Positions 25,601 through 62,423 of a stretch of DNA of 64,000 bases are shown in pieces. Each line of letters opens with the position of its first letter. The stretch's first letter is position 1. Both the position numbers and the translations under genes were made by a program. The stretch is from Vitrella brassicaformis CCMP3155. Its lineage: Eukaryota; Protista; Chromerida. The notes beneath the pieces were generated by a model that was not told where the DNA came from, did not search any database, and was given only the letters and a program-made list of their open reading frames with translations. The stretch covers positions 19,274 through 83,273 of the forward strand of contig CDMY01000414.1 in assembly GCA_001179505.1 (NCBI GenBank), written 5' to 3'.

Positions 25601-27468
25601 ATGCTGGTGGTGTCACAGTGGTTGTGGCGCATCTGCTGCCGTGTGGCGTCATGGTGCTGGCGGCGACGCTCCTCCGAGTCCGATCAGCCAGAGCCGGCCA
25701 CCCCGCAGCACCCCCTCACCCATCTCTTTGTCGGCGACGACCAGTCCTGTCTGCTCGACCTCAGCACCATCCTGCAGCTGAGGGCCACCGCGCGATGCTT
25801 CTCAGAGGCCTTGTCGTCTGCACAGCTGCGAAGCCGACTCCACACCTCGATTGCCCGCAGCGGCATCGACACCCAGCTGGTGCAGTTTGACGAGTCGCTG
25901 TGTGGGGGTACTGTGCTGGCGGCCCTGTGGATAGCTGAGGAGGGAGGGCGGTGGGACGATGGCACTGCCGACGTGCTGCGGCTGGCCGACCACTGCGGAG
26001 CCTGCACGCTGCCCGTTGTGCTGACTGCCGAAGACATCAACACACACGCCAACAAGACGGTCCGTAAGGCGCACTTCTGGCGTTTCCCACCCTTCTCTCT
26101 ATGTCTGTGTGTGTGTGTGTGTGTCTGTTTAGGCGTATGTGTCGGTTCCCCGTGTGATTGCTAAGCTCAAGATGGTCGGCCGCCACATCAACCTCGGCGA
26201 CGGCGTGACGTTCCAGCTGTTTCAACATGGCGACAGGCTGCGGGCCATCAAGGACGAGCCAGGCTTCGAGCTGACGCTTGACCCACCCGGCCTGCCTGCC
26301 GGCCACCTGTATCAACGCCACCGACAGGACCACGACCCACCAGCCAGCAGCCGCATTCGCTATTGTGAAGAATGGGAAGCGGAGGATGACGATTCTGAGG
26401 TCACCTATGCGTCGGTGTCGCACTTTGCCAAAGGGAAAATCCTTAACTACTTCAATGTGAGCCGTTCGGATGAGGAGCGGGAGATTGGTAATGACCTATT
26501 GAACTCAGAAGATGTCGACAGGGCGATGTCTGATGCTGACAGGTATGATGTACGGAACACGTCAGTCACTCCGGAGGGCACACATACTCGCGATGTGCGT
26601 GTCGTTGGTTGGCTCAGGCGTGGCGAAGGCGGTGGCCGTCTGACTGCCCTGATGACCGGGTCGCCTCACACACCAGCTATAGGGTGCTCGACGACCATCT
26701 GCAGCGATGGAATGCCAGGTCACCCTCTTGGGCCTGGAATGCTGGTGCAGCTGGTGCTCACGGACAGCAGCCACCCCTTCGTCGCGGAAATAATGCTCTG
26801 CAACTGCGTCAACGGCAGTCGGGACGAACAAAGTCAGCCGCGATGAGATATGATATAGCCGAAGAGATGGACAGGCAAATATGCTTTCTCTCTTTTATTT
26901 GCTTCTCTACAGTGTTTGGAATAGATATATCCACAACTGAGCCACGTGTGGATGTCAGCGGCCGCCCCTTCCCCTGCACGTCTCAGCAGCACTGTGTGTG
27001 CCCATGGGGGCCACGGTGTGTGTTCAAGTACGAATCCCCCGCGACCGCCGCGCTGGCGCGGGAGGCGCTGGGCGATGCGGTGGCGCCCATTGTCTTCGAC
27101 TGGATAGACGACAGCGACGATGACACCGACGATGACAGCGACGATGACGATGGTGACGATGGTGACGATGGTACGCTCTGACCGACCAGACGGGAGGGAA
27201 CACGTGTGTCAGTGTATGAGGTGTCTTGTCTGTGTGTCTCTGTCTGTGTGATGTAGACGGCAGCAGTGACAATGGCGATGGCGATATAGACGACGGCAGC
27301 CAAGGGGGCAGCGAAGGTACGCATCGCAAGGGAATACAAGGGGACAACAACACAGATGCCCATCCATCGCCCTCATCAAAACATGTCGACCTGCATTGCG
27401 TGTGTCTGTGTGTCATGACGACAGGTGATGATGCCGCAGCAGATGACTCGCCAACCGATGCCACATGA
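25601..27468 (+). CDS. Hypothetical protein of a Vitrella-type expanded family, with an acidic tail
   Basis: HPLTHLFVGDDQSCLLDLSTILQLRATAR..., AYVSVPRVIAKLKMVGRHI...RAIKDEPGFEL...DPPASSRI..., NG|MFGIDISTTEP. Asp-rich terminal exons end at TGA 27468. Family recognition is from memory, not from a search. Confidence 0.65.
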
Positions 27469-30063: not shown

Positions 30064-30203
30064 CTGCACCGCTGGCTCTTTAGCTGAAGGGCTGGCCCTG
30101 TGGCCGTAGGGCTGGCTTTGCAGCTGCAAGGCTGGCCTTCTGACTGCAGGACTGGCCTTGTGACTGGAGGGCTGGACATCCACCTGCAGGGCTGGCCCTA
30201 CAG
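30064..30203 (+). repeat. Imperfect 20-bp minisatellite, 7 units
   Basis: ctgcaccgctggctctttag / ctgaagggctggccctgtgg / ccgtagggctggctttgcag / ctgcaaggctggccttctga / ctgcaggactggccttgtga / ctggagggctggacatccac / ctgcagggctggccctacag. Confidence 0.85.
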
Positions 30204-30346
30204 GCCCTACAGGCGGACATGCCAGCCTTCCGGCCACAGGGTAGCTTTGGCGAACAGGTCGCGCCTATTGCACCGGCCTAGTGTTTCATCATCCACAAGG
30301 CCCCATACATCAGGGCCTTGCAGTACATGCCGCCGCCATTTGAGTC

Positions 30347-44031: not shown

Positions 44032-44623
44032 TGGGGGGGAAAATTGAGGGCGCTCACCGCGGCCTGCAGCAGCACAAACAGAGCATACACAGGCGCATCT
44101 ATCTGTGTGTGATTGTATTGGCATTGAGAAGCGAGATCTTTCCCTCTCACCTTAGCTAGCCAGATCGGTGAGATCTGCGGATAGATAGCGTTGAATGTGA
44201 TCCTTGAAGCTGCGTTGAGATAAGCCCGCGGCCACCCTCTCTTCGTCTTCGCTTGCGCGATCCTCTCAGCCCGACCGAAATAATAGTACCCTGGTGGTTT
44301 CGGTGGGTCGGGGAGAGAGGGATGGATGGATGGATGTGTGGATTGGCTGTACAAGGGTTGACGCATACATGCAGGCAGGCCGGATCATGATTGTCATATA
44401 TACAGCAGACACCAGCTATTGTCACGACCACATGCACATCAGTCGACCACACACACCGTTTTGCTACACACCCGGCTCGTGCCTCATGGCGGCCCGCCGT
44501 CACCGTATCAGCTGCAGACAGGAAGCAGTGACAACACCCAGTGGACGGCGGGTAGAGAGCGGTGATAGTGCCTTAACATCTCACCTGTGTGTCTGCAGTG
44601 TTGATAGGGTTCATATGATCGAC

Positions 44624-46675
44624 TCAGTCGCTCCCCCCCTGGACACGCAGGCATGTGCGATGGCATCAGCATGCAGCCATGAGTGTTCCTTCCCCGTGCC
44701 CTCCCCGCCCTCACCTCTGTGATGTGCCATATCTCAATCTCGCTCGCTGTGAAGTTGTTCGACTGCGCCAATGTGCCGTTGCCCTGCTGATTGATGTTGC
44801 CCTTGTATCCCAACGGCAGCAGCTCGTCCTTCGCGATCCACTGGTGGCAGCTGCTGAGGTCGGCAGCCGGACCAGGCTCGGCGAAACCCAGCCAGAGATA
44901 CCCGCGACCGATGTAGACATTGGCAAGCGGCTCGCGCTTTTTGTCCATCACCGCCCCCTGTGTGCCGGCCACCGCCACCGTCTGCCTGTCCTCGGGCAGC
45001 TCGATCTTGGTGGGGGTGTCATAGGCGCCGGACAGCGAATAGAAGAAGGTGGGCACCTTGTATTCTTGGGGCGGTGTCAGCTCGCCGTCGATGAAGCACC
45101 CGAATCGGTGCGTGTCGCCGTCTCGGAGGGCGAACAGGAGGCCGCTCTTGCCCGCCACACACTGCAGCATCTTGGGGTACGCATACGTGTCGCGACTGCC
45201 CCTGAGGGATGGATGGCACGGGAGCAATACACACAAAGACGGTGTGTGCTGGGTGCATTTGCTCTCCGTGGCTTCATATGACTGCTCGCCCACCTGTATA
45301 TGAGCGATGGCTTTGGTGAGGTTTTGCCCGTCATCTTGAGCACCTCGTTCCACTCCTCGGCCGTCTCGATGACCAAGTTGCCCCCCGCCAGGCCGCTGCA
45401 GAAGGGCTCGTGCTTCAACCCATACATCTCGGTGTCGACCTGCATCTGCCTGGCGTTGCTTGCCGTCGGCGGCATGACGAGGGACGCAGGCTGTGTGATG
45501 CGCTTTCTGCGGGCAAAGTCGACCACCTTCATGAAAGGCGCAGACGACGTGGCGTGGACAGCCGCACCGCTGCAACAATACAGAGAGAAGATGAGAGTGG
45601 CCATGCAGCCTCTCCCGTCTGTTCGATCGGTGTTGTGTCACCTACTCGTGGAATGTCGTGTAGAGTCGTTTGTCGCGGCCAGCATGTGACAGTGTGGCCT
45701 CGGTGGTCGAAACCGTCTTGCCCCCAACCCGCACGCTCCTGATCTCATCCCCCTGCCCCACCCCCGACGCCAGCAGCGGCTTCACGAGCTTGTAGAAGTG
45801 CTTCAAGCGGTCCTCGGCCGCACCCAGCCAACCCACTGACGCATCCAGGCTTGCAATGCTCTTGCTGAATGTCGCCATGCCGTCGATCGCCTTATTCTCG
45901 CCCTCCTCCTCTCCGTCTTGCTGCTGCTGTTCGTCGTCGACCTGCATGTTGTCGTGGTCGTCATTGTCTGGCGTGGGTGCGTCTGCGGGCATGTCGATGT
46001 CCAGGCTGGTCTTGGAAGCGAAGAGGAGGTCGTGCCAGAAGAGCGACGAGCTGTCGGTGGCGTGAACGCCAGTGAGCTCAATCTTGGCGGTCTCGCCCTG
46101 GGCATCGACGCCGAACAGCTTGGCGATCTCGTCAAACAACCTGAGACAGACACAGAACAACCACAGAAGAAACCATTAGGTTGGCGGGCCGATTCTTCGT
46201 CATCTCTTTCGCACCGACTGCACAGGGTTGCAGCTTACCAGTCTACATACACAGGGTCAGCATCGAGGAAGGGCCGGCCGTCCGTGTCCTTCGGCAGTCC
46301 CTCCAGATGGTACAGCAGCAGATATGCAATGACGCTCTCACTCACGCCGGGCAGCAGCAGCGGCTTGCGCGGCACACACAGCACCGTCCCGCCCACGTTG
46401 ACCTCTATCTCCTCATCCAGTTGCCCCATGGCACTCGGCTGCCCTCCGTTGCTCGTGATGAGCCCTCGAATCATCGCCGCTTGCTCGCGCAGCTTTCTCC
46501 TCATCTGCTTGGCGTTCTGCTCGATAGCCGCCAGCGATTGGTCGGCCTCCTTGAGCGCTTCATCGATTCGTCGGCGGCCGATGGTTGGGAGCGGCTCAAA
46601 CTCGTCAACATCGCCTCTTGCTGCTGCCGCAACACCCGCAGGCGGCTCATCCGCCTTGCGCTTCTTCGACAACAT
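44624..46675 (-). CDS. BTB/POZ(T1)-like plus TLDc-like protein, expanded family, paralogue 1
   Basis: IEVNVGGTVLCVPRK...LPKDTDGRPFLDADPVYVDW, a second T1-like repeat SVRVGGKTVSTTEATL, and the TLDc-like SLIYR|GSRD..HRFGCFIDG..FFYSLSG..LWLGF..FTASEIEIW. Confidence 0.8.
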
Positions 46676-46802: not shown

Positions 46803-48975
46803 ATGCTGAGTCAGCAGGAGCTTGACACGCTGCTGCAGACGCTCAACGACATCAACAGCCCCTTCGAGAAGCTCGGCAGCGCCCTGCGGGACAGTTACCA
46901 GAAGCAGGACCTCTTCAAGGTCGGGTCGGTGATCTGCATCCTCCTCGAGGACGGCCTCCTGGCCTTCGAGGCGCGGCTGGTGGGCTTCTACCTGCTCTAT
47001 GACATCTACGCCTCGCAGTCCGGCGTGAGCTCCAGTCCCTTCATCCCCCTGGTGCTCGACACCATCCAGTCTACCAAGGATGAGCGGGAGCGACGGTTCC
47101 TAGAGTGCTTCCTCTCGTCGGTCCCCAAGGAGGTGCGCCGCGAGGGTGACACACACAGGGCGGGCATGCAGATACACGTGACGGACGGATGAGTGGCTGG
47201 CACTTTTGTGTGGTTGTGTGTGTAGATCCACACGCAGTCGCCTGTGCAGTGGCTGTCGAGGCTCAATCCCAATGAGGTGTGTAAGCCGGGCAAGGGCAGG
47301 GAGGAACGGTCTCTCTATCGCTGGCTGCTTCTGCAGAGCTCGGGCAACGTGGATCTTGCCGTCTTCAGAAGGTTCTTCTCTGAGGGTATGCCTCTGTCAT
47401 CATCGTCCATCCATCCATCCATCCATGTGTCGTGTGTTGTGTGTCCGCGTACGTGTGTGTGCAGGTGCGCCCAGTGTGACGGGTTTCGAGACTATGGGCG
47501 TGCGGCCGTCGGTGAGGGACTCCACGCCCTCGTGGATCGTCGAAGAGCCCCTCGAAGCCACGTGAGCAAACCAGATGAATGACACACAATGGGGCAGCCA
47601 GCCGGCCATGGCGGTGGTCATCTTTGGCTGCAGGACGTTGTCGTCTGAGGATCTCAAGTCGAGTGAGCTTCACATGCTGAGCCTGGAGCCGTCATGGGTC
47701 CGCCCACCGCCCCCCCTCCTGGACCCAACGGCTGACGAGGTATGCAGCCATTGATTGAGCCGATGTGCCTATCTGTTTGTCATTCACTCATCGGCTTGTG
47801 TGTTGTGTTGTGTGTGTCAGGTGTACTGGCTGCAGGTGCCCCTTTTGGCCGAGCCTTTGTGGGACTACAGCATGTGTGTGGACCAGGCCTTCGGGGGAGA
47901 GGTCAGTCAGACAGGCAGTCAGCCGACAGGGAGGGACACACAAGGGAGAGAGAGGTTCGCGAATGGCCTCTTTGTGTGCAGATGAAGGCTTTGCTGTCCA
48001 ACGCAATCGTCAACTCCGTCGCACCCGACGTCCAGAACGTACGTCGCCGCACACCGCGCCACACCACAGCACACCAACCAACAGATATCGCCATGGAGGG
48101 TTTATTGCTATGTATGTCTTGGTTGATGCAGACGATATGCGAGGCGATCGACCAGGACCCCAAGCTGGTCTACCACTGCGGCCTCACACCACAGAGACTC
48201 ACCTCACTGGTGCGGACACGACACAGCCACACAAGAGATCTCCGTCGCGTGGGTATGTGTGTCCGTCCGTCCACCCGTCGAGTCGATGGTCTGTCTGTGT
48301 CCTCAGATTGAGAAGAACCCCCCCGTGGCTGTCAAGTGCCTCGAGAAGCTCATGTCGTCCGCACAGATCACCGAGTGAGTGAGAAGACTGGGCTGTGCAC
48401 CCACCTAAGGCAGCCGTGTGCATCTTTTATGTGTGTGTGTGTGTGGTTCACATGGTCAGTTACCTGTCTGTGATGCTCAACAACCCGATGTCGCTTCGCT
48501 GCATGGAAGTCGTCGACAAACTCGCTTACTCAGGTCGGTCGGTTGGCGGAGTGGTGGCCGTCGCCGCAGCCGTCATCTGCAGGTCCCCATGTGTGTGTGG
48601 ATGTGTGTGTGCCTGTGTGTGGTGGGTGATCAGTTGAGCTGCCGGCCGAGTTCCTGCAGGAGTATATCGCTCGGTGCATCTACTACTGCTCAAACGTCTC
48701 AGACAGCACTCAGCAGCGACACGTCAGACTGGTCAGTGAGTGGAGTGCCCACCAGGCACCGCGCCAGTCACCCCATTCCATGCACTCACTCATCGAGTGT
48801 GCGTGCGTGTCGTGTGTGTCAGGTGTGCATCTTCATCCATTCACTGCTGCGCAACGAGCGCATCAGTGTCGACAACGTGCTGCTGGAGGTGCAGGCCTTC
48901 TGCATCGACCACGCCAAAATCAAGGAGGCCGCCAGCCTGTTCAAATTCCTGAGGCTCAAAGAGCAGGCCACGTAG
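46803..48975 (+). CDS. CNOT11: CCR4-NOT complex subunit 11
   Basis: RLVGFYLLYDIY..SPFIP, WVRPPPPLL, EPLWDYSMC, DPKLVYHCGLTPQRL..IEKNP, MSLRCMEVVDKL, LPAEFLQEYI, RHVRLVCIFIHSLLRN, EVQAFC..IKEAASLFKFL. Confidence 0.93.
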
Positions 48976-49480: not shown

Positions 49481-49722
49481 CAAGACAAACAGACACAAGA
49501 TAGGCAGGCAGTGTCCAGCCTTACGATCACCAGTTGTAGACACGAAGCGCATGTCTTTCCTCTGCCAACAGTCAGTCGCTCTGCCTGTGCTGCATGGTGC
49601 GTTCCCTCATGTCAACCTCCACCCTGGCTTCATCATCTCCTCGCCCTCTCTTGGCAGTGAGGGTGAGGAGCTGACGAAGACGCCGGCAAGGGAGACATCA
49701 AGCAACACACCCACGCACAGAC
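49481..49722 (-). repeat. Dispersed non-coding repeat, copy A (truncated)
   Basis: Shares gataggcaggcagtgtccagccttacgatcac ... ttggcagtgagggtgaggagctgacgaagac ... caacacacccacgcaca with copies B and C. Confidence 0.92.
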
Positions 49723-49804
49723 ACACACAACGCACAATAGACGAGCCGTGCCGTCACGCTACGTTTACACACCTGCCTCTGTCTGTGTCAGTCAGTCAGT
49801 CAGT

Positions 49805-51206
49805 CTATCTGTAGTAAGCAGTGGACGTGGGGTGCATGAGTGTGGGATCGAGCAGGATCCGCGGCCCCCCACGGGCCTGCAGACTGCCGCCCAAGATGAA
49901 CTCCTCAGATGTGGGCGCCGTCTTGCTCTCAACCTTCAACGCTGATCGATTCGATCGACACACAGGGAGGGAGATCCATCACGCTCGTGTGGTGTGGGTG
50001 TGGGTGTGCAGGTCCATGCGCACCTTGGATGGCGGGGTCTGTCTTGGGTGTGAATCGAATGTCCTGGTGCGGGGGCCACTGGAAGGTGCCCTCGCCTGAC
50101 GTCGTGGCGCCGGTCGTCTTGGTGCGCACCTTCATCACCTGCACAACACAACATACACACACACATCCACACAAGAGGCAGACAGACATGGACGAATCGG
50201 GGGGGGATGGATGGATGGATATGTGTGTGTGTGTGTGTGTGATCTCACTCACCTCTCTGATGAAGTGTCTCATGTTCTCGAGCAGCTGAGCGGGCAGAAA
50301 CGCCGTGTGTGCCAGCTGGATGTTGATCTCGCCCTCGCCCTCGGCACGGAACTCTATCTGCACACACACACACACACACACCCCACAACAACAACAACAA
50401 CAACAACACACCCACGCAACGCAACGCAATGCAATGCATGACGGTCGTCCCCCTCTGTGAATCCGCCCGCTCTCTCTGTGGTCTTCTCATCTCACCTGAG
50501 CACCCGATTTGGCGAGTTTGATGGCTTCCCGCAGGTTCGCCGTGATCGTTCCGCTCTTGGGATTGGGCATCAACCGTCGAGGGCCCAATGTCTTGGCAAT
50601 CTTCAGCACCTGACAGACGACAGACAGACACAGACGCAGGTGGCTTCTGTGTCTGGTGTGTCTTGGTGGGGTGTGTGTAACCTGAGGCATGACGACAGGT
50701 GTGGCGATGCACCGCTCGAAGCCGATCCAGCCCTTGGAGATGTCCTGGATGGGCTGAGTCAGGCCAGCAAAGTCAGCACCAGCATCCAACATCTCCTGCG
50801 CCTCTTCGTCTGGGCAGAAGACGAGCAGTCGCGTGTCGGCCTGCAGCCCATAAGGCAGCTGCGTCACCCCCCGCACGCTCTCCCTCTTCAGATCCACATT
50901 CACCCGCATCCCAAACATCACCGGGTCACGCCGCTCGGGCCGGCTCACAAACGCCTGAAGCAGCCGGGCCGCCTGGAACGGCGACGCCAGGATGGGCGGG
51001 GCCTCCTTTGTCGAGACGCCCACCTGCTCGAGCAGCGCCTGGGTGGACGAGAGGGGCTCCCGCTTGGACGGGCTGCGCTTGCGGATGAAGTGGAAGGGGA
51101 TGTACTTCTTGGTGCGCTGCTGCGCGTGGCGGAAGGCCGGCGGGACGGGGGGGCAGCAGGGCAGCTGATGGGCGAACCGGGCGGCAGGGAGGGAAGAGGC
51201 GTTCAT
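49805..51206 (-). CDS. rpl1: Organellar (probably mitochondrial) ribosomal protein uL1, 5 exons; start uncertain
   Basis: VRGVTQLPYG..RLLVF..AGADFAG..I..GWIGFERCIATP..MPQ|V.KIAKTLGPRRLMPNPKSGT, IEFRAE..INIQL..F...QLLEN. There is no signal peptide, only a basic presequence-like N-terminus. Confidence 0.9.
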
Positions 51207-51392
51207 TGGACTTGCGTGTTCGATGATCAAATGTCCGCGGAACTGGGAGATCTGCCTTCTCCGCAGTGTCCAGCCGTCGTGGGCGTCACATACACGCCTT
51301 CTTCGCTGCTTCTCCCTTTCTACTCTGCGAGCTTGGCGGCGAGCTCAAATTCGCTTCCAGTTTTGAGCACGAGGAGAAGACGCCTGTTCGTC

Positions 51393-54300
51393 ATGGTCCG
51401 GTTCAAAGTTGACGGCTTGGATGTGTTCTTCCCCTATGAATATGTCTATCCCGAGCAGTGAGTGCGCCGACGCACACACCACAGGACAGACACGCCTGCA
51501 GCAGGCGCACACACAGATCCACACACACGCACACACAAGCGGCCTCATCCCTCTGTGTGTGCAGGTACCAGTATATGTACCACCTCAAGCAGACGCTCGA
51601 CGCGCAGGGCCACGCCGTGCTGGAGATGCCCACCGGCACCGGCAAGACCGTGGCCCTCTTCTCCCTCATCACCTCATACCAGCTGGCGCATCCCGCTACC
51701 GGCAAGCTCATCTACTGCACCCGAACAGTTCCCGAGATGGAGAAGGCCCTCGAGGAGCTGCGACTCGTCACCCGCTACCGCGTTAGCGAGCTGGCCAAGG
51801 ACCGCTCTGCAGCTGAGGACCACCAGATGCCTGACGCCGGTTCTGCTGCTGCTGCCGCTGCAGCCAGTGGTGGTGCTGGTGCTGCTGCGGGACCATCGAA
51901 GGACAAGTCGATGTCCAAGGGTCACATTCTGGCCATCGGTATGAGCGCCCGGCGGAACATGTGTGTGCATCCGTCGGTGAGCCAGGAGGCCGACCGCGAT
52001 AAGGTGGACGAGCGGTGCCGGCAGCTGACGGCGCCCTGGGTGCGGCAGTCGGTGCTTGAGAAGGAGGGCAACCACGAGCTGTGCGACTTTTACGAGAGCT
52101 TTGAGCGGCACGGCGCGACCACTCTGGTGCCGCCGGGGGTGTACACCATCGAGGACCTCAAGACGATGGGCGCCAAGGCCAACGAGCCCTTCTGCCCCTA
52201 CTTTGCTGCGAGAAGGCTGCTGCAGACGGCCAACGTGGTGGTGCTCAACTACCAGTACGTCCTCGACCCCAAAGTCTCACAGGTAGGAGGAGACGAACGC
52301 ACCAGCCGCCATCGATCTCATTCATGCACTGCATTGATCAATCTCGTTGCTCGGGTGGTGCTGCTGACGTCAGGCGGCCCTTCTGGGCACTGGTGTGGGC
52401 CGCGCGCCGCCCAGCTATGCGGGGGCGGCGTCGGCCGGTGCGCAGACGTCGGCCAAGTCGTTTGCGGCGAACAAAGAGCCGAGCATCATTGTGTTTGACG
52501 AGGCGCACAACATCGACAACGTGTGCATCGAGGCCCTGAGCGTCAACCTCAATCGACAGACGCTCGAGGCGTCCAGCAAGAACCTGACCAAACTGATGGA
52601 CCAAATCGAAGAGTGAGTGAGCGTGGGGGAGAGAGAACGTGATGCTTATGCCCGTGGGTGTGCATGTGGGTGTGGTGTGGTCTGTTGTGGTGTAGGGTGA
52701 AGAGGGTGGACCAGCAGCGCCTGCAGGACGAGTATCAGCGGCTGGTTGGCGGGCTGCGGGACGCCGGGCAGATCGATGCCGACATGTTTGAGCACCTCGC
52801 AAACCCTCTCCTCCCAGACGACATTGCTAAAGACGTACGTACGGCAACCACCCACACCCACACCCACACAGACATCTCTCTCTCTCTCTCTGTGTGATAT
52901 GTCATATGGTGGGTGCAGGTCATCCCGGGCAACATCCGTCGTGCGGAGCATTTCGTGAGTCTGATGCGGAAGGTGGTGCTGTACCTGAAGACGTACATCC
53001 GGGTGTTTGAGGTGCAGTCGGAGGGACCCCTGTCCTTCCTGCACAAACTGGAGCAGGAGACATCCATCGAGGCGAAGACACTCAAGTTCTGCTACGAGCG
53101 GCTCAGGTATGGATGGATGGCCACTTTGGGTGGGCACACAGGCAGACAGACGAAGAGAAGGCATCAGTGTCAGTGGATGCATGCATGGATGGATGGCTGA
53201 CTGTGTGGTGCAGGTCGTTGCTGAACACTGTGCGCGTGACCAATCTTGACGAGTTCACGCCCCTCACCCTCGTGGCCGACTTCTGCACACTCGTCGGCAC
53301 CTACTGGTCCGCCACCAGCACCAGCACCTCACACAAGACACAGACAGACAGGCGGTGCTCTCTCTTCCATGTGTGGACGTGTGGATGTGTGGTTGCAGGG
53401 ATGGGTTCATCGTGATAACAGACCCATGGCCTGAGGCGACGGGCATCTACGACCCATTGCTGCAGCTGAGCTGCCTCGACTCGTCCCTCGCCATGCAGCC
53501 GGTCCTCAAGAGGTACCAGTCTGTCATACTCACCTCGGGCACCATCTCGCCGCTGGAGCTCTACCCCAAGATTCTCAACTTTCAGGTATGTATCGATGTG
53601 TGATGTGTGATGTGTGATGTGTGTGTGTGTGTGTGTGGCCGCTTGCACCAGGGCTGGCTAATGTGGGTGTTGTCTTGTGCTCGTGCGTGTAGCCTGTGTT
53701 GACGGAGTCGTTTCCCATGTCGCTGGACCGCGACTGTTTCTGCCCGCTGATCGTTTCCAGAGGGGCCGACCAGGTGCCACATGTCAGCCAAGGGGAATGT
53801 TGACAATAGCCTGCATGGACCATCATGCCTGTGTGTGGTGTGTGTGTGTGTGTGTGTGTGTGTGCAGGTTCAGCTGTCATCCAAGTTCGAGTTGCGCAAC
53901 GACCAGTCTGTTGTGCGCAACTACGGCTCGCTGCTCATCGACCTCGTCAAGACGGTTCCTGATGGGATGGTCTGCTTCTTCACCTCCTACGCTTACATGG
54001 AACAAGTCGTCGCACAATGGTAAGTTAAGTACGTTCAGCTTGGTCACCTCACCCGACACACACACCGGACGGACAGCCGTGCCAAGAAACAGACACGTGT
54101 TGTCTCTCTCCCCCTGTGTGTGTGTGTGTGTGTGTGTGTAGGTATGAGATGGGCATCATGACTGAGGTCATGTCGCACAAGCTCATCTTCCTGGAGACCA
54201 AAGACGTCGTCTCGACCACACTGGCGCTACACAACTTCAGGTGCGGTGCGTCACGTCGACAGACACCCACCAGACAGACACACAGCACACCACACCACAC

Positions 54301-54782
54301 CACCTCCGCTTCTCTGTCTGTCTGTCGGTCTGTCGGTCTGTCAGGCGAGCCTGTGACAGCGGCCGCGGTGCGGTGTTCTTTTCGATTGCCCGCGGCAAAG
54401 TGGCCGAGGGCATCGATTTCGACCGTCACTACGGGCGGTGTGTGGTGCTGTTTGGGGTGCCCTTCCAGTACACCTTGAGCAGAATCCTCAAGGCCCGGCT
54501 GGACTTCATGCGAGAGCACTTCCAGATTCAGGAGGGCGAGTTCCTGACCTTTGACGCTATGCGGCAGGCGGCCCAGTGTGTGGGGCGGATTATTCGGTCC
54601 AAGAGTGACTACGGCATTATGATCTTCGCCGACTCCCGCTACAGCCGCCAGGACAAGCGCACCAAGCTGCCCCCGTGGATTCTCAAACACATGCAGGCCG
54701 CCAACATGTCGCTCTCATCCGACGTCGCCGTAAGCAAACACAGACATTCATCGGGTGTGTGTGCTGTCGGACAGCCCATCTC

Positions 54783-54819
<37 letters not shown>

Positions 54820-55116
54820 ATCGGTGTGGCCAAGACGTTCCTGCGTCAGATGTCGCAGCCCTACAGGGTGACCAACGCCTCCCGGCTCGACGCCAAGGCG
54901 GTGCACGCCCTGGAGGCCAAGTGCAGAGAGATGGTCAAGTCAGCATTCCTCAAGCAACACGGTGCCACAACCACTGATGCCAAGATGGAGGAAAGCGACA
55001 AGCCGTTTACCGACAAGGCAGAAGATAATACGACTGCGACGGGCAGTGCCGCTGAGGGCGGTGCTGCTGCGTCGAGTGAGCGCCCGGCGAAGCGTGTCAA
55101 AGTGGAGGAGCTATAG
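51393..55116 (+). CDS. ERCC2: TFIIH helicase XPD/Rad3
   Basis: [32 protein letters not shown], Fe-S cysteines (MCVHP, RCRQL, LCDFY, FCPYF), [49 protein letters not shown]. Confidence 0.99.
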
Positions 55117-55192
55117 AGAGAGAGAGAGAAGAGGGCACGGGCAGTGCTGTCTGCAGTGCAGTTGCCTTGTACATAGCAGAGAGGGAGGCACA

Positions 55193-55658
55193 TGTGCGTG
55201 GGTGTGTTGCTTGATGTCTCCATTGCCGTTGTCTTCGTCAGCTCCTCACCCTCACTGCCAAGAGAGGGCGAGGAGATACCGAAGACGAGGCGAATGACGG
55301 CATGAGGGAACACACCAGCACAGACAGAGCGACTGACTGTTGGCAGAGGAAATACATGCGCTTCGTGTCCATCTACAGTGATCGTAAGGCTGGACACTGC
55401 CTGCCTATCTTGTGTCTGTCTGTCTTGTGACGTCTCCATTTCGTGTGGCTGTGGCTGTGGCTGTGGCTGTGGCTTGTGTGCCTTCTCTCGCGCCTTCTCA
55501 TCCTATGTTCTTGGCCACCTTGGCCGTGACAATGTGCTGTGGACAGACACATGATTACTGCCAAGGGGGTCGGAGGGCTAATGAGGAAGAGGCGGGGGCA
55601 CAGAAGGGAAGCAACAGCACAGCTGGCGGAGAAAGAGCGGGAAGTGCCATGTGTGAAT
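55193..55658 (+). repeat. Dispersed non-coding repeat, copy B
   Basis: Reverse complement of 59627-60077 at roughly 90% identity by eye, with a 12-bp indel near one end and an internal (GTGGCT)n tract. Confidence 0.92.
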
Positions 55659-55664
55659 CTGCAT

Positions 55665-55700
55665 TAACCCTAAAGCAGAAACCCCTAAACCCGAACCCTG
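55665..55700 (+). repeat. Degenerate telomere-like/telo-box tract
   Basis: taaccctaaagcagaaacccctaaacccgaaccctg. Confidence 0.45.
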
Positions 55701-55849
55701 CTTGAGGCTGGTTCAGCGTGGAATTGAATTGGGCGGCCGCAGGTGATTCTCTTCTTTCCTCCCAGTGACGCCTCTCACGGTCGTTTTGTCGCTCCTTTCT
55801 GCAGGCGTTCGTTCAATGGAGTTTTTCCTCTCTCTCCTCACCCTACGTG

Positions 55850-57127
55850 ATGAGCACACCCATGGAGTCCTTCGACGCTGAACTGCTGCTTGTACCATCT
55901 GCGGCGAGGAGGGGTGCGACACTCCTTCAGCTGCTGGGCGGGCTGCTGCTGCTACTGTTTGTTCAAGTGGCTGTTGGGAGCGTTGAAGGAGAGCGGCGCA
56001 GCTGTCTGTCTTGGTGGCTGGACAGTCACTCACGCACACGCACGGACAAGAAGGTGAGCAGGGGAGGGAGGAAGACAGCCACTGCACTGCACAGCACGGC
56101 ACAGACACATCGATACGTACGCACTCTGCACTGAGTGGGAGGTCAGGTCGAGTGTGTTGTCTAGTGAACACGCCAAAGACATAGAGAAACAGATATATAG
56201 ATAGATAGCTCCTCTGCTGCGCTGCGCTGCGCTGCGCTGCTCGTGTCGGCCGACGCGATTTTTTGCCCTTTTTCTTTCTGCTCTTCACTTCGCTTGTCTT
56301 CATCATGGGTCACTGGATGAGACTCACTGCCTACCTTGTCCATCTGCCTCTCTGCCTTTCAGCCCCCCTCCCCCCTCTCTCTCTTCGTCACCCTCCGCCA
56401 CCCCCACAGCCGGCCGGCAACGCAGCCTCGCAATGCTCTCAAGGCATCGCGGCATCAAGACGACAGCCCTGCTGCAGACACAGAAGAAGACAGTGTCATC
56501 TTCCCCTCCTATGGTGACGGCAGCCGCCGGCGTGTGAGATGGTTCGACACAGAGGGAGGGGTGCGGTTCAAGTGCACCGAGTGCGGCAAGTGCTGCCGCA
56601 CCAGGGGCAACGTGTGGGTCAGCCCACAAGAGCAGCGGGCGATCATCGACTACCTTTCCATCGACGGGGCGGCCTTCATCGAGCTCTACACCGAGGAAGG
56701 GGTGGACAACGACGGCTGGCGGCTCCTGAGAGACGTGCCTGACGACGAGTGGGCAGGGGGCACAAGTCGCTGCATCTTCCTGTCTGGAACAGAGTGCTCC
56801 ATCTACCCCGTCAGACCGTTCCAGTGCGCCACCTACCCCTTCTGGCCTCCCATGTTGAGGTCCAAGGAGGCTTGGGAGAGCGAGGCTGTGTGGCCGGACG
56901 ACGAGAGAGCGGGCGATGGGTCCTTGCCGCGATGGACTTACGAGGGGGGCGGGTGTGAAGGCATCTGGTCGGATGAGAGGGTCAGGCAGCATTTGCTGGA
57001 GAGCAAGGCCGAGGGATTGTTCGGTCGTTTTAAGGGTGGGGAGGAGGGATACGAGTCGATATCTGCTGAGGTTTTGAACCGATTGTGGGAGGAGTATAGG
57101 GCTTACTGGCGTCGATTCCCCGGCTGA
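55850..57127 (+). CDS. YkgJ/UPF0153 CxxCxxCC cysteine-cluster protein, probably with a bipartite leader; first exon inferred
   Basis: FKCTECGKCC, CIFLSGTECSIYPVRPFQCATYPFWP, GCEG. The frame is closed by TGA at 56318, so an upstream exon is needed. Exon 55850-56053 (hydrophobic LLQLLGGLLLLLFVQVAVG) joins the acceptor at 56362 in phase 0. Confidence 0.8.
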
Positions 57128-57412
57128 CGCAGTGTGTGAGTGTGTGTGTCTTTTCCGCCCTCTGTATTGTCACTCACTGGGCCGTGTAGTGTAGTGTGTT
57201 GTATTGTATTGTATTGTATGGTGTCTGTCTGTCATCACAGCTAGATGTGCACATCATCCATCCATCCATCCATCGACCCACCCGAGCCAGGCTCCCATAT
57301 CTGTTCTTGCTGGGTGTGTCCATGTCTGTCTGTATCTCGGTAGGTGGTGTTGAGGCCGCCCTCTTGCTGTTCCTTTCTCCCCCCTCTCTCGCCCCACCTG
57401 CCGCCGCCCCCC

Positions 57413-58033
57413 ATGGCCACCCTGCTGCCATGCCGCACGTCCGCTGCCCTCGCCCATTCCCCAATTTCCCAGCCCCAGCCCCCACCTCTCAAGATCTTCA
57501 GCATCCGCCTCCCCGACTCATCAGCAGCAATCGGCATCTCAGAGTGTCCAGGAAAACGCGACCGTGACCTCACTGCGGACCTCGACGCCATCGCTGCTTC
57601 AGGCGCCTCTCTGGTGCTCACCCTTATCGAGAAATCAGAGATGGAGAGGCTGGGCGTGGCGGGCATCGGCGAGGCCGTCTTCGAGAGAGGCATGCGATGG
57701 CGGCATCTGCCCATCCGCGACTTCAACGCCCCCGGGTCGCTCTTCGAGACGGCCTGGGTCAACGGGGGAGGGCACGAGGCACGCGCCGTTCTCAGAAAAG
57801 GCGGCCGTGTGCACGTCCATTGCCGCGGCGGCATCGGCCGGGCGGGGACCATATCGGCAAGGCTGCTGGTGGAGCTGGGCATCTTCACACCAGAAGACGC
57901 GATCGACATGGTGAGGAGCGCGCGGCCGGGAGCGATCGAGACGCTTGACCAGGAGAGGCACGTGCGGCAGTGTCGGGCGGTGGTGGACGAGCGGCACCAT
58001 GACAGGGGCGCAATGAGGGAGAGGGACAACTAG
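57413..58033 (+). CDS. Intronless bacterial-type Cys-based protein phosphatase (CDKN3-like family)
   Basis: IGISECPGK, RDLTADLDAI, VLTLIE..E, WRHLPIRDF..P, P-loop VHCRGGIGRAG (57818-57841), VRSARPGAIET..QE. Confidence 0.9.
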   Translation: MATLLPCRTSAALAHSPISQPQPPPLKIFSIRLPDSSAAIGISECPGKRDRDLTADLDAIAASGASLVLTLIEKSEMERLGVAGIGEAVFERGMRWRHLPIRDFNAPGSLFETAWVNGGGHEARAVLRKGGRVHVHCRGGIGRAGTISARLLVELGIFTPEDAIDMVRSARPGAIETLDQERHVRQCRAVVDERHHDRGAMRERDN

Positions 58034-58316
58034 CTCACAGAGAGACAGACAGACAGACAGACAGAGAGAGGCGGGATGTACGATAGATGGACGGACAGAT
58101 GGGCTGGTTAGGTTAGCGCTTATCTCTGTGGGCCGAGCTGCCATTTTGAGAGAGGTGGGCTGCAGGCTCAGTTTTGCCCTTGTGCGTGCATTGACGACTC
58201 CGTGTACAGGTGTGTGTGTGTGTGTGTGTGTGGACATATCCGACCCGTTTTTGACGTTTTGCTCAAGTAGGTGAGTAACTATGCCTGTCTGTCTGTCTGT
58301 CTGCCCGTGTGTGGGG

Positions 58317-58354
<38 letters not shown>

Positions 58355-58396
58355 TGTGAGTACGGACGGCTTGATGAGTGAATATCTCTTTCTGGC

Positions 58397-59508
58397 TTGC
58401 TTGAAGCCGCATCCTCCCCCCGAACCAAGCTCTGCTCTCTGTCTGTCTGTCTGTGTGTCTGTATTGGCTTCAAGCAGGCATTATTCCAATGGTCACCGAA
58501 TGACACAGCCCCAGCCCACAACTGGTACGCAATCAACCCCACGCACAGCCACACGTCACTGCCTGCTGTCCCTCCTCGCTCCTCAGACGACCTCCGCGAG
58601 GCTCTGTGTGAGATCGATCGCATGATGGGCCGCCTGCACGCCAAACGACACACCGCCACCGACACATGGCTCTCGCCCACACGCACAGCAGCAGCAGACC
58701 ACGGCGAGACGGCCATCCTGCAGAAGATCACCCACCTCTGCACCAACACAGCCGAGACCGATCAGATCGCCATCGCCGGCGGCGTCTTCAGCCACACGAC
58801 CGACCCCCTGTGGATGCTGTCACAGGGGGATGACGTCTCCGTGTCGGTGCGGGCGCCAGCAGCATCAGGGGGCTGCCAGCGGCTGATGGATGGCGTGGGT
58901 GAGGTCAAGCGGGCGATTCAGGGGGCGGTGTGTCCGGTGTCTGCCACTGGCGACATCGTCCCATGCAGCTGGCTGCCGGGGGAGCTGACGGTTGTGGCCA
59001 AACGGGACCTTGCAAGGGGCGAGCTCATTGCCGAGTATCATGGGTACTTCCTTGACCAGGTAGCTGTGTGTGTGTGCATCCACACCCACACCCACATGCG
59101 CACGGCACACACAGGATCTCTCTGCTCTCTGTCTCTCTCAAGCAGAGCGAGCCCTCCAATGAGCACTACAATGCCACCGTCGGCGGCAGCAGGGGCATGA
59201 CCACAGTCGACCCCACCTGTGGCGACATCGAGGGCCCCAACACCGTCTGCTCCGAGTTCGCACACTCGATCGCATGCCGCATCAACGAGCCCCCGCCCCA
59301 CTCAACTACTGCAACGGCAGCAGGCGGTGTCAACTGCAGCTGGAAGATTCGCCGGCACAGGGCGCCGGAGGTCTATGCAGCGAGGGATATCGTGAGGGGC
59401 AAGGAGCTGTTTCTGGGTTATGGCGGGGGATTTGCGGACGAGAGGCGGTACCCAGTTGCCGAGGGGTGTCGCTGGCTGCAGACTGAGGACAGCTATGAGT
59501 CTGACTGA
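58397..59508 (+). CDS. SET-domain-like protein; start uncertain
   Basis: VVAKRDLARGELIAEYHG, IACRINEP...VNC, VYAARDIVRGKELFLGYG. Phase-0 intron at about 59061-59144. Confidence 0.7.
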
Positions 59509-59626
59509 CTGACCGTCTGGCTGGTCAGACTGACTGGATGGATGGATGGAAGGAAGGAGACATCTTGTTCGTCTAAATGCCTGTGCGGATGTGGATCATG
59601 CATGAGAGGAGAAGTATTGCTCACAT

Positions 59627-60077
59627 TTCATTCAGGGCACTTTGTCGCTCTTTCGTCTGTCCGCCAGCGTGGTGCTTTCTGTGCCCCCGCCTCTTCCTCA
59701 TTAGCCCTCCGACCCCCTTGGCAGTGATCATGTGTCTGTCCACAGCACATTGTCACCGCCAAGGGGGTGGACAGCAAAGGATGAAAAGGTGTGAGAGAAG
59801 GCACACAAGACACACACTCAGCCACAGCCACAGCCACACGAAATGGAGACGTCACAAGACAGACAGACACAAGATAGGCAGGCAGTGTCCAGCCTTACGA
59901 TCACCACTTGTAGACACGAAGCGCATGTATTTCCTCTGCCAACAGTCAGTCGCTCTGTCTGTGCTGGTGTGTTCCCTCATGCCGTCATTCGCCGCGTCTT
60001 CGGTATCTCCTCGCCCCCGCTTGGCAGTGAGGGTGAGGAGCTGACGAAGACGACGGCAAGCAACACACCCACGCACA
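59627..60077 (-). repeat. Dispersed non-coding repeat, copy C
   Basis: See copies A and B. Confidence 0.92.
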
Positions 60078-60146
60078 GACGCACCCGACCAACCAAGAGC
60101 AGAGACAGCCAAGATCACACCTACTCGGCCCACCTCGCTATGGCTC

Positions 60147-62053
60147 CTATCTGTCGATCTGTCGGCACATTCCGCCGAACAGCCAGTCGATGAAGCTTCT
60201 TGGCTTCTCTGACTGCCACCCATATGTGGTGGGCTCCATATGATAGATTCCATCTCATCACACGTGAAGTTCATGGTCCGCGCCATTAAGCCGTCGCCGT
60301 TGCCCTGCTGAGTGTACCCCCCCTTGTACCCTTCCGGCAACTGGTCCCTCTTGATCCACAGGTGGCAGCTGCTGAGGTCGGCCGCAGGGCCAGGCTGAGC
60401 GAATCCCAGCCACAGATAGCCGCAAGCGATGCACACATTGGCAAGCGGCTCGTCCATGTCGTTTTTCGACGCCCCCTGTGTGCCGGCCACCCCCACCGTC
60501 TGCCTGTCCTCAGGCAGCTCGATCTTCGTGGGCGCCTCGTACGCGCCGGAGAGCGAAAAGAAGAAGAGGGGCATCTTGTAGCGGTTGGTCTGTTTGGGGT
60601 CGGCCGGCGGGGTGATCTGGCCACCGAGGAAGCAGCCGAATCGGTGCGTGTCGCCATCTCGGAGGGCGAAGAGGAGGCCGCTCTTGCCCGCCACACAGTC
60701 GAGCATCGTGGCATAGGCACTCCCATCACGGCTAGACCTGATCCACACACATACACACGTGCATCCACTGCACCGACGGGACGCACAGCCATTCGTGAGC
60801 GCCCGGCTTACTTGAAGAGCAGCGATGGTCTGCACATGGGCTTCTTTATCATGTCCAGCAGGCTCACCCACTCCTCTGCCGACTTGATGACCCACTCATG
60901 GCCGGCCGGCAGGTCCAAAATGGGCAGTAAGTCAGACCATACATTGTCAAATCTTCTCGAAACAGCTCACGCTCGGCCTCGTCCATCAGCGGGGGGCGGA
61001 TGAGCTGCCCCTTGGGCAGCACCGAAATTCGCCGGGCGAAGTCGACTGTGTTGACGAAGTGCTTGGTGGGGGTCTGACGCACACGACGGTCACCCCAGCA
61101 GGGCGGAGTGCTGCACAACCACACACATACACAGATGTGACCTGCCTTGTCGCTCTCCGTCTGTCGTTTGTGAATGTGTTCACTTTGAGAATCGCGTTAG
61201 CAGGGGATGGTCATTGCCAAGTCGCTGGAGGGTGCGCTTCATGCAGCTCACCTTCCGACCCATCACGTCCAAGCTCAGCACCGCGCTGTCACCTCTGGCG
61301 TCATCCTGACCCTTCATAAACGGCTCCATTGCCGAGAGGAACTTGACCACTTCCTCCCTGCGGCACGTCAGCCGCTTCATGACCTTCTCCAGATCGCTCA
61401 GCGACGTCTGAATGATATCCGCGATGGCCTTCTCGTCACATGCGCCATCGACCGCCTTGGTCGTGGCGGCACCGTGGCGCCTGTGTGTCGGAGCTGAGAA
61501 GGACTGCAGCTCTCGCATGAACAGGGAGTGGTACTCGCTGTAAGTCGGGTCAGCCGCCTTGGAGGGCGGCAGCTCGACACTGCCGGTGCGGTGGGTCTCG
61601 TGGAGTGTCAGCTCGTCCAGAAAGGCCTCGAAGTATGCGGGTGACGCCTCCAGATAGACATGGCCATCAGGATCTCGCGGGAGGCCGTCAGAGAAGTGCA
61701 TCAGCAGGACTGAGATGTATCGCTTGCGCATCAAGGGAAGGAGGAGCGCACGGCGGGACACCGGAAACACCACGCCGCCTGATCAGCCAGCCGATACACA
61801 CACGACAGACAGACCAACACAGACAGTCACATCACGACTCTCATGCTCTCGTCCTCTTCTGCCCTGCCCAGCACTGCACGCCTGCGTTGACGAGCATCTC
61901 TCCTTTGGTCTCCGGGGGATGCGACACGCCGCCTCTCTCAGCAACGAGCCGCGAGGTCACCTCCGTTAACACCGATTTGGCGCTCATGAGTCGCTGAATC
62001 GACGCATCCAAGTCGCCGTCGATGGTCTCGCATCCGCCAAGCAACTCAAGCAT
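60147..62053 (-). pseudogene. BTB-like plus TLDc-like family paralogue 2 with two apparent 1-nt deletions
   Basis: Clear paralogue of 44624-46675 (CVAGKSGLLFALRDGDTHRFGCF, KIELPEDRQTV, PGPAADLSSCH). Homology is restored only by frameshifts near 60926 and near 60250. Confidence 0.7.
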
Positions 62054-62423
62054 CACGACGAACCAAGATGATGACGACGACTGGCTGAATCCAACCGAAG
62101 ATCCTGGTCACACAGGCTGCCAGCTGTCAGCTGCTATGCCGCGGTCAGACGCCTTTCCTCCCACCGCCTTGCTCGTCTGCGAGCTGCGAGCTGAGCTCGT
62201 AAAGGGCAAAGGAGGAAGGAGAAGAAACAGCAACAGCCGTCATCTTCTCCTCTTTCTCTTCCTCCGAACTGCGTGTTCGAAGAGTCTGAGACGTGTTTCG
62301 CCGCGAAAAGTCTTCCCCACGCAAGCCCCACACTGTGAGTCAGTGGGGGAAACCGGCAAGAAGAACCCAAGCGGGGAGTCAGTCAGAGGCAGAGCGGTGA
62401 GGCGACGCTTCACCGACCACGCC

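What the first reader, a model, noticed from the sequence alone, without database searches (positions are those of the whole stretch)
49481..60077. A dispersed repeat sits 70-83 bp behind the stop codon of three unrelated genes, always in the same orientation
Seen: three copies (A 49481-49722, B 55193-55658, C 59627-60077) share one end. Read in the direction of the adjacent gene, that end begins 83 bp after the uL1 stop (49805), 77 bp after the XPD stop (55116) and 70 bp after the frame-corrected TLDc stop (60147). Copy A lacks the distal half. The proximal 60 nt or so look like an intron 3' end (tgtgcgtgggtgtgttgctt...gtcttcgtcag|). No TIR, TSD, poly-A tail or Pol III A/B box was seen. Inference: either a non-autonomous mobile element that targets 3' UTRs or polyadenylation sites, or a portable 3'-UTR/terminal-exon cassette. 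Random insertion would not be expected to give this polarity and spacing, but n is only 3, and copies A and C also lie between convergent gene pairs.
Basis: partly seen in the sequence, partly recalled or inferred. Interest (0 to 1): 0.75.

Follow-up and report, generated by a model that had tools for sequence, protein, structure and literature searches.

The report
Locus-private triplicated hairpin spacer behind genes
A 240-465 base stretch carrying two long hairpins sits just behind three unrelated genes of the alga Vitrella brassicaformis, but these are its only copies in the genome, so it looks like a footprint of two small neighbouring inversions, not a jumping element that targets gene ends.

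Summary
The repeat is real. There are three copies: A 49481-49719, B 55193-55657 and C 59627-60077. They are 85-88% identical overall, and B and C are about 98% identical in the proximal half. All share one sharp end that lies 85, 76 and 69 nt behind the stops of uL1, XPD and TLDc. The repeat is not dispersed. BLAST, three exact-pattern scans and a covariance model found no other copy in the 72.7-Mb Vitrella brassicaformis assembly. It has no TIR, tRNA head or Rfam match. I saw no obvious TSD by eye. The copies alternate in orientation (+,-,+) and bracket two adjacent gene blocks. The shared end is the base of a ~135-nt hairpin. A telomere-like tract sits at one predicted junction. My best reading (about 0.5) is a once-unique double-hairpin spacer copied during two adjacent micro-inversions that reused one breakpoint. 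The polarity argument is weak: two copies lie between convergent genes, so only copy B is informative. This is probably a work-around for a 1-nt frameshift. Function is untested. The scan has noted similar long hairpins between convergent genes elsewhere in this genome. Interest is low to moderate.

The parts
49481..49719 (-). Copy A, 239 nt. It is truncated and lacks the distal half. The strand given is the direction of the adjacent uL1 gene, on which the hairpin folds best.
55193..55657 (+). Copy B, 465 nt, full length. Its sharp end at 55193 lies 76 nt after the XPD stop.
59627..60077 (-). Copy C, 451 nt, full length, with a 12-nt deletion in the 5' arm of the hairpin. Its sharp end at 60077 lies 69 nt after the frame-corrected TLDc stop.
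55193..55325 (+). Proximal long hairpin of about 135 nt with 48 predicted pairs. The equivalents are 49590-49719 in A and 59960-60077 in C. The shared sharp end is the base of this hairpin.
55470..55610 (+). Distal imperfect palindrome or hairpin of about 100-140 nt. The equivalent in C is 59672-59810. It is absent from A.
49805..49807 (-). Stop codon of the organellar-type ribosomal protein uL1 gene (annotated protein P0001, 331 aa).
55114..55116 (+). Stop codon of the XPD/Rad3-type helicase gene.
60147..60149 (-). Frame-corrected stop of the TLDc gene, supported by the C-terminus of homologue P0122.
60246..60250 (-). Approximate site of the 1-nt frame shift in the TLDc gene relative to its homologue. 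It may be a real mutation or an assembly error.
59977..60040 (-). Terminal coding exon of the public TLDc gene model (…T|SSPSLPSGGEEIPKTRRMTA*). It lies inside the proximal hairpin of copy C, behind the acceptor ..cgtcag|.
55664..55699 (-). Degenerate telomere-like tract (GGGTTCGGGTTTAGGGGTTTCTGCTTTAGGGTTAA on the minus strand), 6 nt beyond the distal end of copy B. Its G-strand 3' end points at that junction.
48973..48975 (+). Stop of the CNOT11 gene, 505 nt to the left of copy A. It makes the gap holding copy A a convergent one.
59506..59508 (+). Stop of a weakly SET-like gene, about 119 nt from the distal end of copy C. It makes that gap a convergent one.
55850..56053 (+). Inferred first exon of the CxxCxxCC (PF03692) gene, with an ATG, a hydrophobic leader and an AAG|GTGAGC donor. 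If correct, copy B lies between tandem genes.
   Evidence: inference from sequence

Best explanation
I read the repeat as a once-unique intergenic spacer of about 465 bp, made of two long hairpin-forming palindromes. It was copied twice as a by-product of two small adjacent inversions, not by transposition.

In the staggered-break model, the sequence lying between paired nicks at a breakpoint ends up at both ends of the inverted block, in inverted orientation. Here one inversion turned the head-to-head uL1-XPD block and left copies A and B at its ends, with only the proximal 239 nt duplicated. The other turned the CxxCxxCC-phosphatase-SET block and left B and C at its ends, with the whole unit duplicated. 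Both events broke at the same point, the base of the ~135-nt hairpin. This is expected if a long palindrome is a fragile site.

What is shown: the copies are private to this locus, their orientation alternates, they bracket two gene blocks, they have no TIR or tRNA-like head, and the sharp end coincides with the hairpin base. What is inferred: the inversions themselves, their order, and the fragile-site role of the palindrome.

The module now forms the 3' flank of three genes. It is probably transcribed at least as read-through. No function is demonstrated.
For: (1) The sequence is private to this locus. BLAST of the full unit and of its distal half, two 29-33-nt patterns allowing 3 mismatches, and a covariance model of the hairpin find only these three copies in 72.7 Mb. 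Two metagenome scans found nothing.
(2) The orientation is +,-,+. A and B are an inverted pair around the uL1-XPD block. B and C are an inverted pair (408 nt, 91%) around a 4.07-kb block.
(3) The tree is (A,(B,C)), and the older copy is the shorter one. This fits two successive events with different nick spacing.
(4) There are no TIRs, no tRNA or Pol III head and no Rfam family. I saw no convincing TSD by eye.
(5) The sharp end coincides with the outermost pairs of a 48-bp hairpin. Fold z-scores are -4 to -7.5.
(6) A short telomere-like tract lies 6 nt beyond the distal end of B. Its G-strand points at the junction, as expected for repeats added to a broken end.
(7) In Drosophila, 17 of 29 inversions carry inverted duplications of non-repetitive sequence at their breakpoints, and breakpoint reuse is widespread (PMC1885836).
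(8) The genome is compact, with a median gene-to-gene distance of 92 bp (PMC4501334). Tolerated breakpoints are therefore forced close behind stop codons.
Against: No outgroup or second strain could be examined, so no inversion has been observed. Two independent breakpoints falling 69-76 nt behind a stop, next to an ancestral 85 nt, is still a coincidence of roughly 0.01-0.05 under random breakage within the gaps. A and C share 6 of 7 bases beyond the sharp end, which the simplest order of events does not predict. An alternative order that explains it by microhomology contradicts the tree unless B and C were later homogenised by gene conversion. The differences between B and C are patchy, which hints at such conversion. 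The telomere-like tract could equally be a promoter motif of the next gene.
Confidence: 0.5

Rival explanations
1. The module is functional and is kept behind genes by selection. It could be a 3'-end-formation or terminator unit (a GU-rich start followed by strong hairpins). It could instead be a hairpin-RNA gene (small-RNA precursor or snoRNA-like) processed from read-through transcripts. How the copies arose is then a secondary question.
For: All five hairpin instances fold better on the strand transcribed with the upstream gene, by 1.4-18 kcal/mol, and four of the five carry more G-U pairs on that strand. The sense-strand start is GU-rich. All three copies begin 69-85 nt after a stop. The genome has Piwi-domain genes. 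Other readers of this scan noted long hairpins between convergent genes elsewhere in this genome. The window holds further long hairpins at 4861-5000, 5481-5620 and 30101-30240. One possible old relative of the hairpin lies about 295 nt behind another gene's stop on C517.
Against: No expression or small-RNA data were available. Only one predicted pair shows a change on both sides, and the 5' arm is no more conserved than neutral divergence predicts. Rfam gives only sub-threshold noise, about 30 bits against gathering scores of 90-100. There are no copies at the genome's thousands of other gene ends. The strand bias could simply reflect GT-rich composition.
Confidence: 0.2
2. It is a very low-copy non-autonomous mobile element (MITE, foldback or SINE-like) that moved only locally. 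It has one defined terminus and is truncated at the other end in copy A.
For: The same end is shared by all three copies, and A and C share it to within 0-7 nt further. Copy A looks truncated at its far end, as 5'-truncated retrocopies do. The terminus is CA-rich. The proximal hairpin resembles a foldback element.
Against: There are only three copies, all within 10.6 kb, and there is no longer partner anywhere in the genome. There are no TIRs between the two ends, no tRNA, 7SL or 5S head, no poly(A), and the termini are not Helitron-like (TC...CTRR). I saw no convincing TSD by eye. Vitrella carries very little transposon DNA, 1.5 Mb (PMC4501334). Random insertion would give the alternating orientation only 1 time in 4.
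Confidence: 0.12
3. It arose by local duplication through some other repair route, with no inversion of the gene blocks. Examples are ectopic gene conversion, template switching between nearby intergenic regions, or fold-back repair at the palindrome.
For: B and C show long perfectly identical tracts interrupted by dense patches of change, which is typical of conversion or template-switch events. A 10-nt perfect palindrome (GCACA|TGTGC) is centred on the sharp junction of B. Non-coding local repeats occur at roughly 2 per 200 kb elsewhere in the genome.
Against: This does not by itself explain why the copies alternate in orientation and exactly bracket gene blocks. It also does not explain the reuse of one end point.
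Confidence: 0.13
4. It is a terminal-exon cassette: the AG acceptor inside the hairpin is really used, giving genes an alternative 20-residue C-terminus and 3' UTR.
For: The public TLDc model P0121 ends with 20 residues encoded at 59977-60039, directly after that acceptor. The same short frame, ending at the same TGA, is open in copy B and, as I read it from the sequence, in copy A.
Against: The TLDc gene has a 1-nt frame shift, and the homologue's C-terminus continues in the shifted frame to 60147. The model therefore looks like a predictor's escape from the frame shift. The annotated uL1 protein ends before the repeat. A 20-codon open frame is weak evidence.
Confidence: 0.05

Closest known systems
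Inverted duplications of non-repetitive sequence at inversion breakpoints (staggered-break model; Ranz et al. 2007, PMC1885836)
   Same: An ancestrally unique sequence is present only at the ends of gene blocks, in inverted orientation. It has no transposon hallmarks. One breakpoint region is used twice.
   Different: The scale is far smaller: blocks of 4-5.5 kb and duplications of 0.24-0.47 kb. The duplicated sequence is itself a pair of long palindromes. The inversions are inferred, not seen against an outgroup.
MITEs and foldback elements
   Same: It is short, non-coding and rich in hairpins, with a sharply defined end, and it lies in gene-proximal intergenic DNA.
   Different: It has no terminal inverted repeats between its two ends, and there is no dispersed family. 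I saw no convincing target-site duplication by eye. It exists as three copies at one locus only.
Pre-miRNA-like long hairpins between convergent genes, noted elsewhere in this Vitrella genome by this scan (s1-080136, s1-227167, s1-239624)
   Same: Hairpins of 100-135 nt lie in oversized gaps behind genes. They sometimes have a similar partner nearby and fold better on one strand.
   Different: Here the hairpins are embedded in a larger unit copied three times behind different genes. BLAST of the unit and the hairpin covariance model found no similar sequence elsewhere in the genome, so I found no sequence link to those hairpins. None has expression evidence so far.
Palindrome-associated fragile sites (for example the palindromic AT-rich repeats behind recurrent human translocations); cited from my own knowledge
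   Same: A long palindrome coincides with a recurrently used rearrangement end point.
   Different: This palindrome is GC-rich and imperfect, and breakage at it is inferred only from the shared boundary.

Membership tests
TIR DNA transposon / MITE | Terminal inverted repeats at the two ends of the unit | tested here: not met
   The sharp end (TGTGCGTGGGTG...) has no inverted counterpart at the distal end of B or C. The inverted repeats found are internal hairpins.
TIR DNA transposon / MITE | Target-site duplications flanking each copy | tested here: inconclusive
   I inspected the flanks by eye. They share only 6-mers at unequal distances (GCTACG for A, TGCAGA for B). I ran no shuffle control, and the distal boundaries are fuzzy.
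TIR DNA transposon / MITE | Multiple copies at unrelated loci | tested here: not met
   There are only three copies in 72.7 Mb, all within 10.6 kb.
SINE / retroposed element | A tRNA-, 7SL- or 5S-derived head with Pol III boxes | tested here: not met
   ARAGORN found no tRNA-like sequence. Rfam gave no small-RNA family match above noise.
SINE / retroposed element | A 3' tail shared with a partner LINE, and many copies | tested here: not met
   No other genomic match to any part of the unit. The end is CA-rich but has no poly(A).
Helitron | 5'-TC and 3'-CTRR termini, with a hairpin 10-12 nt from the 3' end | tested here: not met
   The termini read TGTGCG... and ...CACGCACA in either orientation.
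Inversion-breakpoint inverted duplication | The duplicated sequence is otherwise unique in the genome | tested here: met
Inversion-breakpoint inverted duplication | Copies lie in inverted orientation at the two ends of a gene block | tested here: met
   A and B lie around uL1-XPD. B and C lie around CxxCxxCC-DSP-SET.
Inversion-breakpoint inverted duplication | An outgroup or other strain shows the un-inverted order with a single copy | not testable with these tools
   No second Vitrella genome or close relative was reachable. Metagenome scans were empty.
miRNA-like / hairpin small-RNA precursor | A long, stable, mostly unbranched hairpin | tested here: met
   48 predicted pairs; -65 to -76 kcal/mol over 121-136 nt.
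miRNA-like / hairpin small-RNA precursor | Discrete small RNAs mapping to one arm | not testable with these tools
   No small-RNA data were available. No literature on small RNAs in Vitrella was found.
miRNA-like / hairpin small-RNA precursor | The host has Argonaute/Piwi machinery | tested here: met
   PF02171 hits above the curated cut-off at four loci of the genome.

The most novel reading that the evidence does not exclude
The double-hairpin unit belongs to a genome-wide but sequence-diverse class of long hairpins that Vitrella keeps in the gaps behind genes. These hairpins act on RNA, either as small-RNA precursors or as barriers that end transcription between closely packed genes. Under this reading the unit was retained behind three genes because it supplies that function, and it can even donate a terminal exon, as in TLDc.
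Probability: 0.15. Interest if true: 0.55.

Novelty: new member of a known kind. Interest (0 to 1): 0.27.

Why it matters
If the inversion reading is right, this locus is a clean, small-scale record of how a very compact alveolate genome reshuffles gene order. It would show breaks just behind genes, duplication of the spacer between the nicks, and reuse of a palindromic weak point. The locus also flags a likely error, or a rescue event, in the public TLDc gene model. If the hairpins instead prove to be functional, they would link to the other long hairpins seen behind Vitrella genes. That would open the untouched question of small-RNA or termination biology in chromerids, the closest free-living relatives of apicomplexan parasites.

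Tried and rejected
1. A dispersed family. Whole-genome BLAST, three pattern scans and a covariance model found nothing beyond the locus. In the model search only 150 of about 7,900 first-look candidates were scored.
2. The best other covariance-model hit, C517:45202-45341 (27 bits, E 0.14). It shares collinear blocks, including a 16-mer, and folds as a weaker hairpin. It lies about 295 nt behind a stop. I kept it only as a possible old relative.
3. The 14-mer ATGAGGGAACACAC. It occurs 6 times against about 0.5 expected (my estimate), with no match to the reversed control, but only C517 aligns beyond the motif.
4. The motif TCACTGCCAAG, shared by both hairpins. About 70 non-tandem genomic hits against 25 for the control, so it is not a family signature.
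5. Known RNA families and tRNAs: none.
6. A protein-coding reading of the antisense ORFs (116-192 aa). There is no Pfam match, and the frame is broken in copy A by a 4-nt insertion.
7. Conservation in relatives. A metagenome scan with P0122 and an exact 23-mer scan were both empty.
The word search did not return the annotated CxxCxxCC protein within its length range.
9. A contiguous 360-kb control sample.
10. A second duplicated segment at the other breakpoints. Only a 9-mer containing the palindromic CTGCAG was seen by eye, which I judge to be chance.

Exons were handled one at a time, by reference.
Full report
**Organism and setting.** The window is contig C414:19274-83273 of a 72,700,666-base assembly in 1,064 contigs. 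The annotated uL1 protein returned for the window (P0001) is from Vitrella brassicaformis CCMP3155. The size and contig number match the published genome (PMC4501334). That paper reports only 1.5 Mb of transposable elements. It also reports a median distance of 92 bp between protein-coding genes.

**The observation.** Repeat finding, alignment and self-BLAST confirm three copies.
- A is 49481-49719, B is 55193-55657 and C is 59627-60077.
- Identities are B-C 87% over 475 columns, A-B 88% over 240 and A-C 85% over 246.
- All end at ...CAAGCAACACACCCACGCACA|.
- A lacks the distal ~220 nt.

The flanking stops hold up.
- uL1 ends at 49805-49807, exactly as in the annotated 331-aa protein.
- The XPD C-terminal ORF (Helicase_C_2, E 8e-28) ends at 55114-55116.
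- For TLDc, the straight reading frame runs on through the repeat. The frame shifted by one base reads IYHMEPTTYGWQSEKPRSFIDWLFGGMCRQIDR*. This matches the C-terminus of a 75%-identical homologue, P0122, at 81% over 31 aa with E 1e-18.
- The gaps from stop to sharp end are 85, 76 and 69 nt.

**Not a dispersed repeat.** Several searches of the whole assembly returned only these three places.
- BLAST of the full unit.
- BLAST of the distal half at E up to 10.
- Two invariant 29- and 33-nt patterns allowing 3 mismatches.
- A covariance model of the hairpin, though only 150 of about 7,900 first-look candidates were scored.

The best other model hit is C517:45202-45341 at 27 bits and E 0.14. It shares collinear blocks, including a 16-mer, and forms a weaker hairpin about 295 nt behind another gene's stop. 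At most it is an old relative. Two metagenome scans were empty. Rfam gave only sub-threshold pre-miRNA look-alikes, about 30 bits against gathering scores of 90-100, and there was no tRNA.

**Anatomy.**
- The first ~135 nt from the sharp end form one long hairpin with 48 predicted pairs.
- The distal half, present in B and C, holds a second imperfect palindrome of ~100-140 nt.
- Whole copies fold 4-7.5 standard deviations better than shuffles on either strand.
- All five hairpin instances are more stable on the strand transcribed with the upstream gene, and four of the five have more G-U pairs there.
- Only one predicted pair shows a change on both sides.
- The antisense ORFs of 116-192 aa have no Pfam match and change frame in A.

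**Relationships of the copies.**
- In the shared 240 nt, A carries more than 20 private differences. Twelve of them are clustered in the 3' arm of the hairpin.
- B and C differ at four substitution sites there, plus a 9-nt patch and a 12-nt deletion in C.
- The tree is therefore (A,(B,C)).
- B and C show long perfect tracts broken by dense patches. This suggests gene conversion or template-switch changes.

**Polarity and spacing re-examined.**
- Copy A lies between CNOT11 (+) and uL1 (-). The last CNOT11 exon matches PF10155 with E 4e-13, and its stop is at 48973-48975.
- Copy C lies between a weakly SET-like gene (+, stop 59506-59508) and TLDc (-).
- In a convergent gap, either orientation puts the sharp end against a gene's 3' end, so A and C say nothing about polarity.
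- Copy B lies between XPD (+) and what I infer to be the first exon of the CxxCxxCC gene (+). That exon has an ATG at 55850, a hydrophobic leader and an AAG|GTGAGC donor at 56053/56054, with an in-frame acceptor at 56362/56363.
- B is therefore the only informative copy, and its polarity is a 1-in-2 event.
- Without the repeat, the three gaps would be about 590, 270 and 190 nt. By my rough estimate, three ends within a 17-nt band is a coincidence of about 0.01-0.05, judged after the fact.

**Best explanation.** The copies alternate (+,-,+) and bracket two adjacent gene blocks. A and B lie around the head-to-head uL1-XPD pair. B and C (408 nt, 91%) lie around a 4.07-kb block with CxxCxxCC, a dual-specificity phosphatase and the SET-like gene.

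This is the signature of inversions made by staggered breaks. Such inversions leave inverted duplications of otherwise unique sequence at both ends. In Drosophila, 17 of 29 inversions show this, and breakpoint reuse is widespread (PMC1885836).

A two-step history fits the tree.
- The ancestral order would be CNOT11> <XPD uL1> [unit] <SET <DSP <CxxCxxCC <TLDc.
- The first inversion turns XPD-uL1 and duplicates the proximal 239 nt.
- The second inversion turns the unit's other neighbours and duplicates all ~465 nt.

Both events break at the base of the long hairpin, a plausible fragile point. That last step is inference from general knowledge of palindrome instability.

A degenerate telomere-like tract is the only perfect CCCTAAACCC in the window. 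It lies 6 nt beyond the distal end of B, and its G-strand points at that junction. This is one of the new junctions the model predicts.

Weak points.
- No outgroup was available.
- The spacing coincidence remains.
- A and C share 6 of 7 bases beyond the sharp end. This needs either chance or a different event order followed by B-C homogenisation.

**Base rate.** I sampled twenty 10-kb stretches from other contigs. Six held local repeats of at least 100 nt. Most looked coding, and two looked non-coding, one of them inverted at 86% identity. The window also has a 1.1-kb tandem duplication and a TLDc paralogue. Local low-copy duplication is therefore ordinary in this genome.

**The terminal-exon point.** The public TLDc protein P0121 ends ...MNFT|SSPSLPSGGEEIPKTRRMTA*. 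The donor is AC|GTGTGA near 60262. Paralogues and P0122 continue past this donor (...NFTCDEME...), and the window continues likewise once the frame is shifted. I therefore think the exon is most likely a predictor's way around the 1-nt frame shift near 60246-60250. It could still be a real rescue by exonisation. Only RNA data can tell.

**Wider context.** Notes from this scan report near-perfect 88-114-nt hairpins between convergent genes elsewhere in this genome. One follow-up found a hairpin pair in an oversized gap and could not decide between small-RNA genes and a copying accident. My own scan of the window found further long hairpins at 4861-5000 and 5481-5620, apparently in a gap between convergent genes, and at 30101-30240. 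The genome has Piwi-domain genes. A functional reading of the hairpins therefore stays open. I put it at about 0.15-0.2.

**Verdict.** The sequence feature is real and its coordinates are accurate. The 'dispersed, 3'-end-targeting element' reading fails on copy number. The most economical account is a rearrangement footprint built on a palindromic spacer. It is a new local example of a known kind of event, of low to moderate interest.

No transcript data were reachable.

Noticed in passing
window 60246-60250 and 59977-60262 (minus strand): The TLDc gene has a 1-nt frame shift relative to homologue P0122. The public model P0121 skips it with a 222-nt intron into the repeat. It is either a pseudogene, an assembly error or a rescued gene.
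   Followed up: partly
window 55664-55699: A short degenerate telomere-like tract (TTTAGGG-type units on the minus strand) lies about 150 nt upstream of the inferred CxxCxxCC start codon. It holds the only perfect CCCTAAACCC in the window. It could be a break-repair scar or a telo-box-like promoter motif.
   Followed up: partly
window 23760-24881 and 25182-26304: A 1.1-kb tandem duplication at 98% identity, with copies 1,422 nt apart.
   Followed up: no
window 44508-46675 (minus strand), compared with 60147-62056: A second TLDc gene (P0129, 569 aa) lies 15.5 kb from the first, with 78% nucleotide identity over about 430 nt. The word search returned more than 30 TLDc paralogues in Vitrella, several clustered on single contigs, so this is a strongly expanded family with a shared N-terminal region.
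   Followed up: partly
window 4861-5000, 5481-5620 and 30101-30240: Further long, stable hairpins (-70 to -82 kcal/mol per 140 nt). The first two lie about 600 nt apart in what appears to be an oversized gap between convergent genes.
   Followed up: partly
L017:1501-1640 (G000:C517:45202-45341): A weak possible relative of the proximal hairpin (27 bits). It shares GTGTTGCYTGATG, CTCACTG and a 16-mer ending in CATGAGGGAACACAC, and lies about 295 nt behind the stop of a gene ending ...KKWKGTPTIRL*.
   Followed up: partly
G000:C749:10012-11614: A tandem array with a 30-nt period holds dozens of copies of TCACTGCCAAG. It is probably a repetitive coding or satellite region.
   Followed up: no
window 51230-51400: The uL1 (organellar-type) and XPD genes are head-to-head with only about 170 bp between their first coding exons, so they probably share a bidirectional promoter.
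   Followed up: no
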